Assembly: GCF_016433145.1 (NCBI RefSeq)
Contig: NC_058132.1
Coordinates: forward strand, 30,782,437-30,846,436
Direction: 5' to 3'
Length of the DNA: 64,000 nt
Source of the DNA: Gracilinanus agilis
Taxonomy: Eukaryota
The first letter of the stretch is position 1. Each line of letters starts with the position of its first letter. The position numbers and the translations under genes are program-made. The notes under the pieces were generated by a model, which was given only the letters and a program-made list of their open reading frames with translations, was not told the origin of the DNA and searched no databases. This document shows, piece after piece, positions 12,201 through 15,707 of the stretch.

Positions 12201-13828
12201 CTTGCCAGCCATTGAGGGGCAGGTGCCCCGGGGGCGCCGGGCTCCGGGCCCTCGTCCATCTTCCTTTGGGAGTCTTCTCCCCAAAGAAGGGGAGGAACAC
12301 TCATGGCAGGTGGCAGGACTGTGCCTGGCACGACCGACCCGCTGCCCAACCTGGAGGGGCCCCCGAGGCCTTGTATTAAGCACCTCCTGTGTACCGGGCA
12401 TCGGGTCAGCTCCCTCGCCACCATCCAGGCTTTCCTAATGGCCGCCATGGGGTATTCCGTGGCCTGGCCCGAGCCCCTTCCCCATCTCCCTCGGGATTGG
12501 AGATCTTAAAGCCGCCAGGTGGGGCAGTGCGCAGAGCCCCTGGCACTCCCTCAGCTGTGACCCTGGGCACGGCCCCTCCTTCCAGGAGTGCTTGTGGGCC
12601 CCTGGGCCAGGCACGTTTATGGAGCGGCCACTTCCAGTTACTGCACGCAGATCATGATCCCCTTTTACAGAGGAGGAAACCCAGATGAATAAGCCGGGGG
12701 TCACACAGAAATAAGTGCCTGAGGCTGGACTTGAACCCTGGCCCCAGGCTGGCTGCCTCAGCCGGCGAGATCATTCCCAGCTTTGAATCTCTGTGCCTGG
12801 GATCTTTCTCAAGGCCTCGCCCCCCCCCCCCCATTTCAAAGATGAAGAAACTGAGAAACTGAGGCCCCGGAAGGGAGGCCACGTCTAGGATTGGAACCAG
12901 GGTTTGGGCCCGCCCTGGCAGCGCTCTCTCCATCTGGCCGGAAAGGCGGGCCTTGAAGAAAGGCCGGAGCAGGGCGGGGCGGGGGATGCCGCCCCCCTCC
13001 CCCCCTCGCATCAGCCCTTTGTATTTGCAGGAAGCTGCAGTTTTGGGACCTGGAGTTTGAGAGCAAGTCCTTCCTGTACAAACAGGTACAGCGCGCGGCG
13101 GCGGCCCATTTTCCAGGCTGGAAGGTGGAGGCTGGGGGGAGAGGCAAGGATTACCGAACCACCCCCACCCCCGGCCGCTTTGGCTGGGGAACCCCGGAGA
13201 GCCTCGCGGGGGCTCGCGGCGCCCCCTGGTGGTGATGAGCGAGCAGGCTGCGCCGGGGGTCGTGCGGCTCCCTCCGTGCTTCCTCCATGGGGGGGCTCCG
13301 CTGCGCTGAGGCGGAGGGGGGCCGCGTCGCCCCCGGGCGGGAGGGGGCTGGGCGGTTGACCGCTTGGGGGCTGCGGCAGGTGCGGAGGATGACGGCGTGC
13401 CTGGTGGCCGTGGGCCTGGGGGCCTCGACGCCGCGGCAGGTGAAGGAGAAGCTGGAGAGTGGGGACCCCGGGAGAGGCCCCGGCCTCCTGGTGGCCCCCG
13501 CGCAGGGCCTGTTCCTCAAGACCGTGCAGTACGCCGGCCTCGGTGAGCGCCCCCTCCCCGGGCTCTGGGACCCCAAACCCGCGGGGGGACGGGGCGGAGC
13601 CGACAAAAGGCGCTTTCAGTGCGGCGGGGCGGGGGAAGGGGGCAGGATGTGAACAGGCGCCGAAGGGCGGCCAGGTGCCGGGGGCCACAGGGAGCCCATT
13701 TTCTCCCCTCACATCCGGGGCTCCGCCTTCCCTCCCCAGACTGGGCCCCCGGTGAGGCTTGCTACAATCGCCCGTCTGTCTCCGGAGGCCGGAGCCCAGG
13801 ACACGTGCCAGAAGGGCCTGAGCTCTGA
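237..13828 (+). CDS. PUSL1: tRNA pseudouridine synthase-like 1 (TruA family), spliced CDS
   Basis: join(237-295, 6061-6118, 6863-7050, 9778-9924, 10148-10321, 13031-13085, 13380-13542, 13740-13828?). Phases chain in frame (933 nt, 310 aa). TruA motifs RYLVFFQYVGT, SRTDAGVHA (catalytic Asp), FHARF, HDFRAF, SFLYKQVRRM, APAQGLFL. Last exon uncertain. Confidence 0.92.
3096..3305 (+). mobile_element. tRNA-derived marsupial SINE (SINE1_Mdo-like) with long A tail
   Basis: GGCAGCTGGGTGGCTCA head, GGTTCAAAT B box, GTGACCCTGGGCAAGTCACTT core, A tail. Confidence 0.85.
3612..3845 (-). mobile_element. MAR1-type SINE (similar copies at ~2520-2645 and ~62355-62580)
   Basis: TTTTCTTGGCAAAGATACTAGAGTGGTTTGCCA..TTTGACAGATGAGGAAACTGAGG signature. 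Confidence 0.7.
4395..4592 (+). mobile_element. SINE1-like element with 14-bp TSD
   Basis: AAAATCCTTGGTGG at 4381-4394 and 4593-4606. Confidence 0.9.
5891..6066. other. Assembly gap (176 N)
   Basis: Run of N. Confidence 1.
6061..6118 (+). CDS. PUSL1: PUSL1 exon 2 (..MAIKRPGQRVGVQNFLE); first ~6 nt in N gap
   Basis: VGVQNFLE motif, GAG|GTAAGT donor; start inferred from phase and expected 58-nt length. Confidence 0.8.
6863..7050 (+). CDS. PUSL1: PUSL1 exon 3 (RAAERLN..SRTDAGVHA..HPDIR)
   Basis: CCCAG| acceptor, CAG|GTATGG donor, catalytic motif. Confidence 0.95.
8045..9187 (-). mobile_element. Two antisense SINE1-like copies (~8045-8225, ~8985-9187) around L2/MIR remnants
   Basis: Reverse-complement SINE consensus. 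Confidence 0.75.
9778..9924 (+). CDS. PUSL1: PUSL1 exon 4 (VIRAFRAPDDFHARF..CWPLRA)
   Basis: CTTCTAG| acceptor, GA|GTAAGT donor. Confidence 0.95.
10148..10321 (+). CDS. PUSL1: PUSL1 exon 5 (HLDVAAMQEAA..HDFRAF..QEK)
   Basis: CCCTAG| acceptor, AG|GTAAGA donor. Confidence 0.93.
13031..13085 (+). CDS. PUSL1: PUSL1 exon 6 (KLQFWDLEFESKSFLYKQ)
   Basis: TTTGCAG| acceptor, CAG|GTACAG donor. Confidence 0.93.
13380..13542 (+). CDS. PUSL1: PUSL1 exon 7 (VRRMTACLVAVG..APAQGLFLKTVQY)
   Basis: GGCAG| acceptor, G|GTGAGC donor, TruA C-terminal motifs. Confidence 0.92.
13740..13828 (+). CDS. PUSL1: Candidate PUSL1 terminal exon (DWAPGEACYNRPSVSGGRSPGHVPEGPEL*)
   Basis: Nearest strong acceptor CCTTCCCTCCCCAG|; alternative acceptors at 13914 and 14093; tail not recognisably conserved. 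Confidence 0.4.
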
Positions 13829-14105
13829 CTGGGTCCAAGAAGGGAAACCGAGCGGATCGGAGCCCCCCCAGCCCCCGGGTACGCCCACACGCCCTCAGCC
13901 CCCTCCCTGACAGGCACCCCGGGGCCCCAGGCTGTTAGGATGCTTCCTGGGGGGCGGGGGCACGTCACTGCTCGAGGTTGAAGCTTCCTGTGGTTCAGGG
14001 GTGCTGGCAGAGCCCATGGGGGAGGGGGCGCAGGCTCCAGGCCCAGGGTCCCCCTCACGTAAGGCAGTCCAAACCCAGGTTGTCTTCAACAGGTCCCGCC
14101 TGCCC

Positions 14106-15125
14106 ATGGCCCTGAATGACACGGGAAGCGCCTTGTCGGCCGAGCTCCAGGGCCACCGTCTGTTGGCTGTGGCTTATGGCGTGGTCTTTGCAGTGGGCCT
14201 GGCTGAGAACGTGGCGGCCGGGAGCCTCCTCCTGGCCAGGCTGCGCCGCTCCAGCCCCTCTGCTGTGCTCCTGCTGAGCATGACCGCAGGCGGTGCCACC
14301 TTCGCGGGCGCCCTGCCCCTGAGGGTCCACTACCATCTGTGTGGGGGCGACTGGCGCTTTGGGGAGCTGGCGTGCCGGCTGAGCGGCGGCCTCTACTGGG
14401 CCTTCACCTTCCTCAGCGCCGCCTCTCTCTTCTGCCTCTGCCTGGACTGCCACCTGGCCCTGGCACACCCCTTCAGCCGCCTGCGCCTGCGCCGGGGCCA
14501 CTGGGCTGCGGGGAGCCTGCTGCTGTGGGGGCTGGCCGTGAGCGTGGCCACCCCCCTGGCCCCGCCAGCCCCCCTGAGTCGGACTGGCCCCAACAACCGC
14601 ACCTGGTGCTTGGAGACTCCTGCGGAGGAGGCGGGGTCCAGGCCTCACGGCGCCTATGCCCAGGTGGTGGGCCTCCTGGCGCCATGTGCCCTCGTCCTGG
14701 GGGGCTGCCCGCTGCTGGCCTGGCGCATGGCCTCTGGCCGCAGGACGCGACGCTGCCGGAGGGCCCTCAGGACCCTCTGCTTCAGCATGCTGGTGTGCGC
14801 ACTCTGCTTCCTGCCCTTCGCCCTCACCCGCCTGCTGCCCCGCTTCAGCCGCCTCGGCTACCTGCGCCCGGCGGTGCTGCTGCTGGTCAGCCTGGGCTCC
14901 TGCCTCAGCCCCCTCCTCGGCCTTCCCTGGCTGTGTCGGGCTGGCCGCAGGTTCTGGGCTCGCCTCTGCCCCTTCAGACCCAAGATATACACCATCTACG
15001 ACGGCAGGCTGGGCAGGAGCGGCCAGCTGGGGAACGCTGGAGAGAGCCAGGCTGGAGGAGCAGGCCTGTGTCCCCAGGAGGCCCCCCCGGACCCTCTATC
15101 ACCTACAGGAGCTCAGGACACATGA
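14106..15125 (+). CDS. Intronless class A (rhodopsin-like) GPCR, P2Y/LPAR6-like orphan, 339 aa (369 aa if ATG 14016 is used)
   Basis: Seven hydrophobic segments. N-glycosylation sequon NDT at the N-terminus, TM1 GLAEN, TM2 LP (P2.58), ECL1 WRFGELAC, post-TM3 HP, TM4 W, ECL2 Cys (TWCLE), TM6 CFLPF, TM7 SCLSP. Acceptor TTGTCTTCAACAG| at 14092 just upstream; AATAAA at 15262. Confidence 0.85.
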   Translation: MALNDTGSALSAELQGHRLLAVAYGVVFAVGLAENVAAGSLLLARLRRSSPSAVLLLSMTAGGATFAGALPLRVHYHLCGGDWRFGELACRLSGGLYWAFTFLSAASLFCLCLDCHLALAHPFSRLRLRRGHWAAGSLLLWGLAVSVATPLAPPAPLSRTGPNNRTWCLETPAEEAGSRPHGAYAQVVGLLAPCALVLGGCPLLAWRMASGRRTRRCRRALRTLCFSMLVCALCFLPFALTRLLPRFSRLGYLRPAVLLLVSLGSCLSPLLGLPWLCRAGRRFWARLCPFRPKIYTIYDGRLGRSGQLGNAGESQAGGAGLCPQEAPPDPLSPTGAQDT

Positions 15126-15261
15126 AAGCGCCCCTCCTGAGGGCCGCTGACCACGGGGGCCATCCCTGGGGCCCTCATCAGCTGCACCAGCCCCCCAGGC
15201 CCTGCCCCTCCTGTCTGGGGCTCAAACCTGGCTTGAAGGCCCTGAGGAGCTACAGCAGACC

Positions 15262-15267
15262 AATAAA
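15262..15267 (+). terminator. Poly(A) signal AATAAA for the GPCR (and likely PUSL1)
   Basis: Canonical hexamer 137 nt after the GPCR stop; T-rich sequence downstream. Confidence 0.7.
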
Positions 15268-15312
15268 AGGTCCAGAAGGAGGACACCAAGGCTGCTGGGT
15301 GGCTTTTGGTTT

Positions 15313-15318
15313 TTTAAT
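15313..15318 (-). terminator. Poly(A) signal ATTAAA for INTS11
   Basis: TTTAAT on + strand, ~325 nt past the INTS11 stop. Confidence 0.6.
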
Positions 15319-15641
15319 TTTCGTCCTTAAAAGGCAGGCTCCGGTGGCTGAGCCTCATTCTAGGCACTTGAAGGAGAGGGGAGTTGGAGCCGGCACCCCA
15401 AACCCCAGGCCCTGACTGCCCTCCTGGAGCTTCTCGACTGGTTGAGGAGACAGAGTCAGCTTCAGATTCCCACCAGGCAGAAGGGAGGTCGGGGCGGCAA
15501 GCCTGGGATGCCAGTGCGGATACAGGGAATCCGCCGGGCGGCGGCAGAGCCTCAGAGCGGGGGCGGCGTTGCTGCTCCTTCCCCACAAAGCGCATCTAAA
15601 GGGTCTTAGGAGACGGCCCAGAGCAGCTCCCAGGTGGGCCC

Positions 15642-15707
15642 TCAGCTGGGGGCCTGCGGGAGCCCCTTCTTCAGCAGCGACGTGAGGTAGCTGCCCAGCT
15701 CTTCATC
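15642..15707 (-). CDS. INTS11: INTS11 coding exon 17 ([21 protein letters not shown])
   Basis: Acceptor, in-frame TGA at 15642-15644. Confidence 0.95.
   Translation of the reverse strand, partial: DEELGSYLTSLLKKGLPQAPS

What the first reader, a model, noticed from the sequence alone, without database searches (positions are those of the whole stretch)
14106..15125. Intact orphan GPCR gene between PUSL1 and INTS11, where human has none
Seen: an uninterrupted 339-codon single-exon ORF with 7 TM segments, the C3.25/ECL2 cysteine pair, P2.58, WRFG and CFLP. These place it among P2Y/LPAR6-like receptors. Knowledge (from memory): human PUSL1 and INTS11 abut at their 3' ends with no gene between, while an 'LPAR6-like' locus is annotated near these genes in some birds/reptiles. 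Inference: an ancestral amniote receptor retained in marsupials and lost in eutherians, with unknown ligand.
Basis: partly seen in the sequence, partly recalled or inferred. Interest (0 to 1): 0.8.

Follow-up and report, generated by a model that had tools for sequence, protein, structure and literature searches.

The report
Marsupial orphan receptor lacking activation switches
Between PUSL1 and INTS11 this opossum carries a real, transcribed and conserved gene for a cell-surface receptor that placental mammals appear to lack; it is an ancient vertebrate gene, but the marsupial version has replaced nearly every residue such receptors use to switch on G proteins.

Summary
Window 14106-15125 (+) is an uninterrupted 339-codon, single-exon class A receptor ORF (Pfam 7tm_1, E=1.3e-21; AlphaFold2 model with 7 helices, pLDDT 83).

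It lies 278 nt after the PUSL1 stop codon and tail-to-tail with INTS11. Five other marsupials and a passerine bird have the same PUSL1-receptor-INTS11 order. A herring-family fish has receptor-INTS11-CPTP. The gene therefore predates amniotes. No placental or monotreme protein turned up in three large protein searches.

It is not LPAR6 or a P2Y receptor. No solved receptor exceeds about 28% identity. In the tree it falls in an unnamed delta-branch family with two old paralogues.

Selection is purifying: ML omega is 0.23, and omega=1 is rejected at p=5e-25. Indels are in frame, and 4 of 4 CDS differences from a DNA run are synonymous. RNA contigs cover 14319-15290 and end at a canonical AATAAA. 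The first ~215 nt of the CDS and the promoter are not covered.

The main qualification is that all marsupial copies lack D2.50, R3.50, H6.52, N7.45, D/N7.49 and Y7.53. Passerines lost R3.50 independently. The most likely reading is an atypical receptor that does not signal in the canonical way. The ligand is unknown.

The parts
14106..15125 (+). Receptor CDS, single exon, 339 codons plus TGA
   Evidence: ORF. Pfam 7tm_1 E=1.3e-21. Start aligned with the other marsupial proteins. ML omega 0.23. AlphaFold2 7TM model, pLDDT 83.
14016..14105 (+). Possible 30-codon N-terminal extension from an upstream in-frame ATG; not conserved
   Evidence: The 369-aa form P0001 starts here. The extension has no counterpart in koala, possum or dunnart.
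14292..14294 (+). Codon at position 2.50, Gly instead of the conserved Asp
   Evidence: All marsupials have G/S/T/A here. Birds, fish, turtles, newts and sharks have D.
14445..14453 (+). D-C-H in place of the D/E-R-Y motif (R3.50 replaced)
   Evidence: Other marsupials have D-S-Y. Turnix, fish, turtles, newts and sharks keep D/E-R-Y.
14907..14921 (+). S-P-L-L-G in place of N/D-P-x-x-Y (7.49 and 7.53 replaced)
15126..15290 (+). 3' UTR as far as the ends of the RNA contigs
   Evidence: RNA contigs end at 15284 (X2), 15208 (X3) and 15290 (X4).
15262..15267 (+). AATAAA poly(A) signal, the only one on + between 13700 and 15450
   Evidence: The same AATAAA(+)/ATTAAA(-) pairing is found in koala and dunnart.
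14319..15290 (.). Stretch covered by unspliced RNA contigs in three runs
   Evidence: X2 14319-15284 (depth 17), X3 14344-15208, X4 14325-15290 (depth up to 22). Contigs carry no strand.
13740..13828 (+). Last coding exon of PUSL1, stop codon at 13826-13828
   Evidence: Gene call. Splice joint 13541/13739 with GT..AG in RNA run X2. Sequence.
13200..13800 (.). CpG-rich stretch (GC 0.70-0.79, CpG o/e 0.64-0.86); candidate promoter, unproven
15313..15318 (-). ATTAAA poly(A) signal of the convergent INTS11 gene
15371..15706 (-). Last exon of INTS11, CDS end at 15642
   Evidence: Spliced RNA contig, depth 124. Gene call.

Best explanation
This is a genuine protein-coding gene under selection. It is the marsupial orthologue of an old vertebrate orphan receptor of the delta ('purine-receptor') branch of class A GPCRs. 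That gene has sat tail-to-tail with INTS11 since before bony fishes and tetrapods split, and placental mammals appear to have lost it.

Shown: the protein keeps what a seven-helix receptor needs to fold and reach the cell surface. It has N1.50, P2.58, the ECL1 Trp, the C3.25-ECL2 disulfide, W4.50, P5.50, CFxP in TM6, P7.50 and two N-glycosylation sequons. It also keeps a conserved arginine at the top of TM7 (7.35) and a conserved cytoplasmic tail motif, RPK-(I/V)(F/Y)TI(Y/C)D.

Also shown: on the branch leading to marsupials it replaced D2.50, R3.50, H6.52, N7.45, D/N7.49 and Y7.53.

Inferred: it still binds something at the cell surface, perhaps an anionic small molecule or lipid as its relatives do. 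It probably does not activate G proteins in the canonical way. It would then act as an atypical receptor: a ligand sink, an arrestin-only signaller, or a partner that modulates another protein.

The transcript ends at the AATAAA at 15262. Where it starts is open: either its own promoter in the CpG-rich stretch, or PUSL1 read-through.
For: Gene reality and selection:
- Pfam 7tm_1 hit and a 7TM AlphaFold2 model with pTM 0.78.
- Structural matches to GPR17, P2Y2 and GPR65 with target-normalised TM-scores of 0.79-0.83.
- ORF open in 7 marsupial entries.
- ML omega 0.23, and omega=1 rejected with 2dlnL=106.6, p=5e-25. Bootstrapped NG86 omega is 0.47-0.63, with every 95% interval below 1.
- Internal indels are multiples of 3, apart from one 1-nt gap in koala that I put down to alignment at the ragged 3' end.
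- All 4 CDS differences between the reference and DNA run X1 are synonymous.

Age and orthology:
- PUSL1(+)-receptor(+)-INTS11(-) in possum, wombat, koala, dunnart and the passerine Falcunculus.
- Receptor(+)-INTS11(-)-GLTP/CPTP in Alosa.
- Tree: clupeids + (birds + marsupials), support 98/95 and 100/96.

Transcription: RNA contigs in three runs end about 20 nt after the AATAAA.

Motif losses.

No placental or monotreme hit.
Against: - No functional data exist. Loss of R3.50 and Y7.53 predicts weak G-protein coupling only from general GPCR knowledge.
- Omega of 0.23-0.6 is higher than I would expect for a typical receptor (from memory), so constraint is relaxed.
- RNA contigs do not cover 14106-14318, and no RNA run holds the 13890-14320 stretch. 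A transcript carrying the start codon is therefore not shown.
- Contigs are unstranded, so INTS11 antisense read-through is not formally excluded.
- There is no poly(A) signal between the PUSL1 stop and the ORF in this species, so some coverage could be PUSL1 3'UTR.
- Several marsupials that I recall as having annotated genomes (Monodelphis, Sarcophilus, Antechinus, Dromiciops) gave no named hit. Their state is unknown.
Confidence: 0.6

Rival explanations
1. It is still a conventional G-protein-coupled receptor. Other residues compensate for the missing D2.50, R3.50 and Y7.53, and it signals through a G protein in response to an unknown, probably anionic, ligand.
For: Purifying selection acts on the 7TM core (YN00 omega 0.18-0.35). 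ICL3 is highly basic and conserved, and so are helix 8 and the tail motif. CFxP and P7.50 are kept. Passerines lost R3.50 but keep D2.50 and NPxxY, which suggests this family tolerates loss of R3.50.
Against: Six separate microswitch or pocket positions are replaced together in all marsupials. From general GPCR knowledge, R3.50 and Y7.53 contact the G protein or stabilise the active state in essentially all class A structures.
Confidence: 0.2
2. It is a decaying relic. The ORF sits in the PUSL1 3'UTR or in read-through RNA, is not translated, and stays open only because GC-rich sequence has few stop codons.
For: GC is about 70% and GC3 is 0.85. An off-frame 358-aa ORF shows that long chance ORFs arise here. 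There is no PAS between the PUSL1 stop and the ORF. The 5' end is not covered by RNA. Canonical motifs are lost. The marsupial stem branch is long, at 1.29 substitutions per site.
Against: Omega=1 is rejected at p=5e-25. Indels are in frame. 4 of 4 polymorphisms are synonymous. The frame is open in lineages that I date, from memory, to about 80 My apart, while the other frames are not. Koala has its own PUSL1 AATAAA 37 nt after the stop. In X2 the depth over the ORF (17) exceeds that of the PUSL1 last exon (3.5).
Confidence: 0.1
3. The ORF is an alternative 3' coding exon of PUSL1, giving a PUSL1-receptor fusion protein, as in the sugar-glider model P0176.
For: P0176 (629 aa, Petaurus) joins the penultimate PUSL1 exon in frame to a point 13 codons before the receptor start, and carries both Pfam domains.
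Against: In the window the ORF is closed by a stop just before 14001, and the two AG sites I inspected upstream of the ATG (14067-14068 and 14091-14092, sequence) are out of frame with the PUSL1 donor. No such joint appears in the RNA contigs. Five other species have separate gene models. A soluble enzyme fused to the extracellular N-terminus of a receptor is topologically implausible.
Confidence: 0.03
4. It is a recent retrocopy of LPAR6 or of a P2Y gene.
For: It has a single exon. Database names given to orthologues include LPAR6, P2RY2-like and GPR17-like.
Against: The best solved relative is GPR17 at E=6e-21, with 24-28% identity in structural alignments. LPAR6 is no closer than GPR4, P2Y1 or GPR17, even for the slowly evolving Alosa and turtle members. 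The position next to INTS11 is shared with a bird and a teleost.
Confidence: 0.01

Closest known systems
GPR17 (uracil nucleotide/cysteinyl-leukotriene receptor), PDB 7y89
   Same: It is the best sequence match among solved structures (E=6.4e-21) and the best structural match (TM-score 0.83 normalised to the target). It shares the delta-branch hallmarks: P2.58, WxFG in ECL1, the ECL2 hairpin with its disulfide, and CFxP.
   Different: Identity is only 24%. In the tree GPR17 forms its own clade, away from this family. GPR17 has the canonical microswitch residues that this protein lacks; the fish GPR17 shows D2.50, DRY and DPxxY.
LPAR6 and P2Y1/2/4 receptors (the names annotators gave to orthologues)
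   Same: Same branch of class A, single-exon genes, with basic residues at the top of TM6/TM7 that suit anionic ligands.
   Different: LPAR6 scores lower than GPR17, GPR4 and P2Y1 for every family member tested. The P2Y nucleotide-binding residues R3.29 and R7.39 (from memory of the P2Y literature) are G94 and L258 here. H6.52 is A or S in marsupials.
Atypical seven-helix receptors with a degenerate DRY motif (ACKR family, C5aR2) - from general knowledge
   Same: A class A fold retained under selection while the DRY arginine or its neighbours are altered. Such receptors act through arrestin or by scavenging ligand rather than through G proteins.
   Different: They are not related within the tree beyond being class A. 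ACKR3 is a weaker hit than the purine-receptor group. This protein also lacks D2.50 and NPxxY, which is a more extreme loss. No scavenging or arrestin data exist for it.
Bird orthologues annotated 'LPAR6 protein, partial', 'P2Y purinoceptor 2-like' or 'GPR17-like' (e.g. P0008, P0350, P0375)
   Same: True positional orthologues. They are sister to the marsupial genes (100/96), share the tail motif RxK-VFTICD, and are 33-37% identical to the window's protein.
   Different: Birds keep D2.50 and N-P-x-x-Y. Turnix keeps DRY. Passerines lost R3.50 on their own (DLY, DHY, DCY, DLW, AQW, DVW).
Turtle, newt, catshark, sturgeon and bichir 'LPAR6-like'/'CysLTR2-like' genes (P0156, P0012, P0009, P0024, P0116)
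   Same: They form the sister subclade within the same unnamed family (97/98). No mammalian member was found for them either.
   Different: They are a paralogue, not the orthologue. Forcing turtles together with birds and marsupials is rejected (AU p=8e-6). All their canonical motifs are intact. No PUSL1 or INTS11 lies within 10 kb in the turtles, the catshark or the reedfish.

Membership tests
Class A (rhodopsin-like) GPCR fold | Pfam 7tm_1 match above the gathering score | tested here: met
   77.7 bits against a cut-off of 30.5, E=1.3e-21
Class A (rhodopsin-like) GPCR fold | Seven transmembrane helices with structural similarity to solved receptors | tested here: met
   AlphaFold2 model with pLDDT 83 and pTM 0.78, 7 helices plus an ECL2 hairpin. 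Foldseek gives probability 1.00 to PAR1, P2Y2, GPR17, GPR4 and others.
Class A (rhodopsin-like) GPCR fold | Fold anchors N1.50, W4.50, P5.50, P6.50, P7.50 and the C3.25-ECL2 disulfide | tested here: met
   N35, W141, P193, P237, P269, C90 and C168
Canonically signalling class A GPCR | D2.50 (sodium site / activation network) | tested here: not met
   G63 in the window, and S/T/A in the other marsupials
Canonically signalling class A GPCR | Arginine 3.50 of the D/E-R-Y motif | tested here: not met
   D-C-H here and D-S-Y in the other marsupials
Canonically signalling class A GPCR | N/D-P-x-x-Y in TM7 (7.49, 7.53) | tested here: not met
   S-P-L-L-G here, and S-P-(V/I/L)-(I/L/V)-(C/G) in the other marsupials
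P2Y nucleotide receptors | Cationic nucleotide-binding residues R3.29, K/R6.55 and R7.39, with H6.52 (residue list from memory of the P2Y literature) | tested here: not met
   G94, R242 (H in the other marsupials), L258 and A239
P2Y nucleotide receptors | Falls inside a P2Y clade in a tree | tested here: not met
   A P2Y3-like lamprey sequence is outside the family clade. Human P2Y sequences could not be added, and were compared only through PDB scores.
LPAR6 | Closest known receptor by sequence is LPAR6 | tested here: not met
   Human LPAR6 scores about 52 bits and zebrafish LPA6a about 61 bits, against 78 for GPR17. The same ranking holds for Alosa, and for the turtle protein.
LPAR6 | Activation by lysophosphatidic acid | not testable with these tools
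   Needs a cell-based assay
Atypical (non-G-protein) seven-helix receptors | Degenerate DRY region with the fold kept under selection | tested here: met
   Motifs. Omega 0.23 with p=5e-25 against omega=1.
Atypical (non-G-protein) seven-helix receptors | No G-protein activation; arrestin recruitment or ligand scavenging | not testable with these tools
   Needs experiments
Pseudogene / retrocopy | Neutral evolution (omega about 1), frame-breaking indels, a recent parent gene | tested here: not met
   No close parent gene.

The most novel reading that the evidence does not exclude
A seven-helix receptor shed the whole class A activation network (D2.50, R3.50, N7.45, D/N7.49, Y7.53) on the marsupial stem. 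It has nevertheless been kept by purifying selection across a marsupial radiation that I date, from memory, to about 80 My. Passerine birds independently lost R3.50 in the same gene, and placentals discarded the gene. On this reading, the ancestral receptor of an unnamed two-paralogue vertebrate family has a second job that does not need G proteins, such as ligand clearance, arrestin scaffolding or chaperoning a partner. That job would be what marsupials and passerines retain.
Probability: 0.4. Interest if true: 0.6.

Novelty: new member of a known kind. Interest (0 to 1): 0.45.

Why it matters
This defines a vertebrate receptor lineage with no human member. Databases currently scatter it under at least eight borrowed names: GPR183-like, GPR68-like, PAR2-like, PAR4-like, LPAR6, LPAR4, P2RY2-like and GPR17-like.

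It supplies a dated and positionally anchored example of gene loss in placentals at a very compact locus.

It also offers a natural experiment. The same gene exists with full signalling motifs (fish, Turnix), with only R3.50 lost (passerines), and with all switches lost (marsupials). Comparing the three in one assay would show what a class A scaffold can still do without its activation network.

It does not bear on a long-standing open question, and no ligand is known.

Tried and rejected
1. One search was wasted. A profile search that included P0007 was taken over by teleost PAR2-like proteins. P0007 is a tandem fusion of two PAR2-like receptors and is not an orthologue.

2. Synteny of the paralogous subclade could not be resolved. 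Turtle (two species), catshark and reedfish loci showed no neighbour within 10 kb. tblastn with PUSL1/INTS11 exon translations found nothing on the one turtle locus in the search database, L004.

3. Four literature searches found no paper on this gene. The zebrafish lpar6a/lpar6b paper (PMC8564058) gives no map position. Whether any teleost 'lpar6' name refers to the INTS11-linked gene stays unchecked. By sequence, the Alosa protein is no closer to zebrafish LPA6a than to GPR4 or P2Y1.

4. RNA support for the 5' end failed. No RNA run holds 13890-14320, and read laying allows only one call.

5. The off-frame ORF at 14339-15415 (358 aa) and the minus-strand ORF at 14055-14648 were considered. 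I rejected the off-frame ORF as a GC-driven by-product, because it is broken in koala (9 stops) and dunnart (3 stops). The minus-strand ORF was not tested separately and I dismissed it on the same reasoning.

6. A PUSL1-receptor fusion, as in Petaurus, was considered. The two AG sites I inspected upstream of the ATG in the window are out of frame, and no joint is seen.

7. The ESM Atlas search returned only generic purine-receptor-like clusters.

8. The window's species groups with the dunnart in the tree (93/95). This contradicts marsupial phylogeny as I know it. I read it as shared GC-driven composition (GC3 0.85 and 0.91), not as history.

Full report
**Observation.**
One search shows an ORF open from 14001 to 15125 on the + strand. 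An upstream in-frame ATG at 14016 gives the 369-aa form stored in the protein collection (P0001).

The protein matches Pfam 7tm_1 (E=1.3e-21, 77.7 bits).

The region is about 70% GC, so long chance ORFs do occur. An off-frame 358-aa ORF overlaps this one. However, only the receptor frame has a domain hit and stays open in koala and dunnart. The other forward frames carry 3-10 stops in those species.

The window belongs to assembly GCA_016433145.1. From memory, this is the agile gracile opossum, Gracilinanus agilis. A PseudoU_synth_1 gene (PUSL1) ends at window 13828. A convergent gene with an IntS11_C domain (INTS11) has its CDS end at 15642.

**Orthologues and age.**
A single-sequence search found proteins about 60% identical in Trichosurus, Vombatus, Phascolarctos and Sminthopsis. 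Each carries a different borrowed name: GPR183-like, PAR4-like, GPR68-like and PAR2-like. Later searches added Petaurus.

All four of the first set show PUSL1(+)-receptor(+)-INTS11(-).

An exhaustive HMMER search of 1.84 billion cluster representatives gave a clear step after the marsupials. The next hits (125-170 bits) are a bird, catsharks, turtles, clupeid fishes and newts. Carpet sharks fell in the same score range, but the tree placed them with GPR17.

The passerine Falcunculus has the same PUSL1-receptor-INTS11 order. The clupeid Alosa has receptor(+)-INTS11(-)-GLTP/CPTP(+). The gene was therefore already next to INTS11 in the common ancestor of ray-finned fishes and tetrapods.

A profile of marsupials plus the bird returned 72 proteins at E<=1e-25. 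Eight are marsupial entries and about 64 are birds (passerines and Turnix). None is placental or monotreme.

I could not search placental DNA. That human PUSL1 and INTS11 overlap at their 3' ends is from my memory.

**Family placement.**
Among solved structures the best sequence matches of the window's protein are GPR17 (6e-21), P2Y2, GPR183, OXGR1 and GPR68/GPR4.

For the slowly evolving Alosa and turtle proteins the top hits are again spread over several receptors: GPR4, P2Y1, GPR17, LPAR6 and P2Y4, at 150-210 bits. No single receptor stands out as the parent family.

An IQ-TREE analysis (LG+C20 PMSF, 40 rows) recovers a family clade (97/98) with two subclades.
- Subclade A holds catshark, turtles, sturgeon, reedfish and newts (99/99).
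- Subclade B holds clupeids + (birds + marsupials) (98/95 and 100/96).

GPR17, GPR4/GPR184, CysLTR1-like, PAR, P2Y3-like and apelin receptors all fall outside the family. Its nearest neighbours are unnamed lungfish, coelacanth, hagfish and lamprey 'LPAR5/6-like' genes.

Forcing turtles to join birds and marsupials is rejected (AU p=8e-6; I named this group only after seeing the tree). The turtle 'LPAR6-like' gene is therefore a paralogue.

The window's gene is thus not LPAR6 and not a P2Y receptor. It belongs to subclade B of an unnamed delta-branch family.

**Selection.**
For the window's species, koala and dunnart (303 shared codons), a GY94+F3X4 model gives omega=0.234 and kappa=4.6. Fixing omega=1, with kappa scanned, costs 53.3 log-likelihood units (2dlnL=106.6, p=5e-25).

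Pairwise estimates:

| Method | Omega |
|---|---|
| NG86 | 0.47-0.63 (bootstrap intervals all below 1) |
| YN00 and ML | 0.21-0.38 |

Internal gaps in a plain nucleotide alignment are multiples of three, apart from one 1-nt gap in koala. I put that gap down to alignment at the ragged 3' end.

The DNA run X1 differs from the reference at four CDS positions: 14192, 14228, 14232 and 14261. All four changes are synonymous.

Constraint is therefore real but looser than I would expect for a typical receptor (from memory). The marsupial stem is very long (1.29 substitutions per site). The didelphid and dunnart tips are also long, and these have GC3 of 0.85-0.91.

**What has been lost.**
Alignment of 30 sequences shows which activation residues each group keeps.

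| Group | D2.50 | D/E-R-Y | H6.52 | N7.45 | D/N-P-x-x-Y |
|---|---|---|---|---|---|
| Subclade A and the full-length fishes of subclade B (the Gadus fragment lacks TM7) | kept | kept | kept | kept | kept |
| Turnix | kept | kept (DRY) | kept | kept | kept |
| Passerines | kept | R3.50 replaced (DLY, DHY, DCY, DLW, AQW, DVW) | mostly kept (Y or Q in some) | mostly S | mostly kept (NPxxY) |
| Marsupials | G/S/T/A | D-S-Y (D-C-H in the window) | S/A/T | G/S | S-P-x-x-(C/G) |

The marsupial and passerine losses of R3.50 are independent events.

The following are kept in marsupials:
- the fold anchors and the extracellular disulfide;
- the NDT and N-R-T glycosylation sequons;
- an arginine at 7.35;
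- a strongly basic ICL3;
- a tail motif, RPK-(I/V)(F/Y)TI(Y/C)D, shared with birds.

The AlphaFold2 model is a confident seven-helix bundle with an ECL2 hairpin (pLDDT 83, pTM 0.78). It resembles GPR17, P2Y2 and GPR65 (target-normalised TM-scores 0.79-0.83, 20-28% identity).

**Expression and gene structure.**
Run X1 is DNA, with uniform depth of about 22. Run X2 is RNA: it contains spliced INTS11 contigs (depth 124) and the last PUSL1 intron joint (13541/13739, depth 3.5).

Unspliced contigs cover these stretches:

| Run | Coverage | Depth |
|---|---|---|
| X2 | 14319-15284 | 17 |
| X3 | 14344-15208 | - |
| X4 | 14325-15290 | up to 22 |

They stop about 20 nt after the only + strand AATAAA (15262-15267). 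That signal faces the INTS11 ATTAAA at 15313-15318. The same pairing is conserved in koala and dunnart.

No RNA run holds 13890-14320. The start codon and TM1 are therefore not covered. This could reflect 3' bias and high GC, or it could reflect a real 5' end near 14320.

There is no poly(A) signal between the PUSL1 stop and the ORF in this species or in dunnart. Koala has one 37 nt after the PUSL1 stop.

A CpG-rich stretch at 13200-13800 is a candidate promoter.

A Petaurus gene model fuses PUSL1 to the receptor (P0176). This hints at read-through splicing in at least one species. In the window, the two AG sites I inspected upstream of the ATG are out of frame, and no such joint is seen.

**Conclusion.**
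The gene is older than amniotes. It is a separate unnamed family, not LPAR6 or P2Y. Only its ORF is intact, not its signalling motifs.

My best account, at about 60%, is a selectively maintained atypical receptor. The rivals are a still-conventional GPCR (about 20%) and an untranslated relic (about 10%).

Two earlier first-stage notes of this scan made the same points about the lost microswitches and the missing PUSL1 poly(A) signal. I checked both independently.

The gene models already exist in public databases, so this is a new member of a known kind and of moderate interest.

Noticed in passing
P0375 against P0008, P0350, P0353, P0356, P0360, P0396, P0399 (bird orthologues): Passerine birds lost R3.50 of the DRY motif independently of marsupials (DLY, DHY, DCY, DLW, AQW, DVW). 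The non-passerine Turnix keeps DRY, and the ORF is open in about 60 passerine species.
   Followed up: partly
P0156, P0159, P0161, P0012, P0009, P0024, P0116; loci L004, L006: A second, paralogous orphan receptor lineage occurs in turtles, newts, catsharks, sturgeon and bichir/reedfish. It has fully canonical motifs, and no mammalian member was found for it either. Its genomic neighbours were not resolved within 10 kb.
   Followed up: partly
P0176 (Petaurus breviceps): A RefSeq model fuses the penultimate PUSL1 exon in frame to the receptor (629 aa, both Pfam domains). This suggests PUSL1-to-receptor read-through splicing in sugar glider, or an annotation artefact.
   Followed up: partly
window 15262-15318; L001 11498-11544; L002 11156-11196: A conserved tail-to-tail pair of poly(A) signals: AATAAA on + lies about 35-50 nt before ATTAAA on the minus strand (INTS11). 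The two convergent transcripts should therefore abut or overlap by a few bases in all three marsupials.
   Followed up: partly
window 14339-15415 (+) and 14055-14648 (-): Long off-frame and antisense ORFs (358 and 197 aa) overlap the receptor CDS. I read the forward one as a by-product of about 70% GC, since it is broken in koala and dunnart. The antisense one was not tested separately.
   Followed up: partly
window 13269-14261 and 16791: The DNA run X1 differs from the reference at nine positions in the 5.8-kb stretch. Four lie in the receptor CDS and all four are synonymous.
   Followed up: yes
tree: The window's didelphid groups with the dunnart (93/95), against what I know of marsupial phylogeny. 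Both have the highest GC3 (0.85 and 0.91) and the longest tips, which suggests GC-biased substitution is shaping the protein.
   Followed up: partly
window 13200-13800: A CpG-island-like stretch (GC up to 0.79, CpG o/e up to 0.86) lies over the penultimate PUSL1 exon and last intron, just upstream of the receptor.
   Followed up: no
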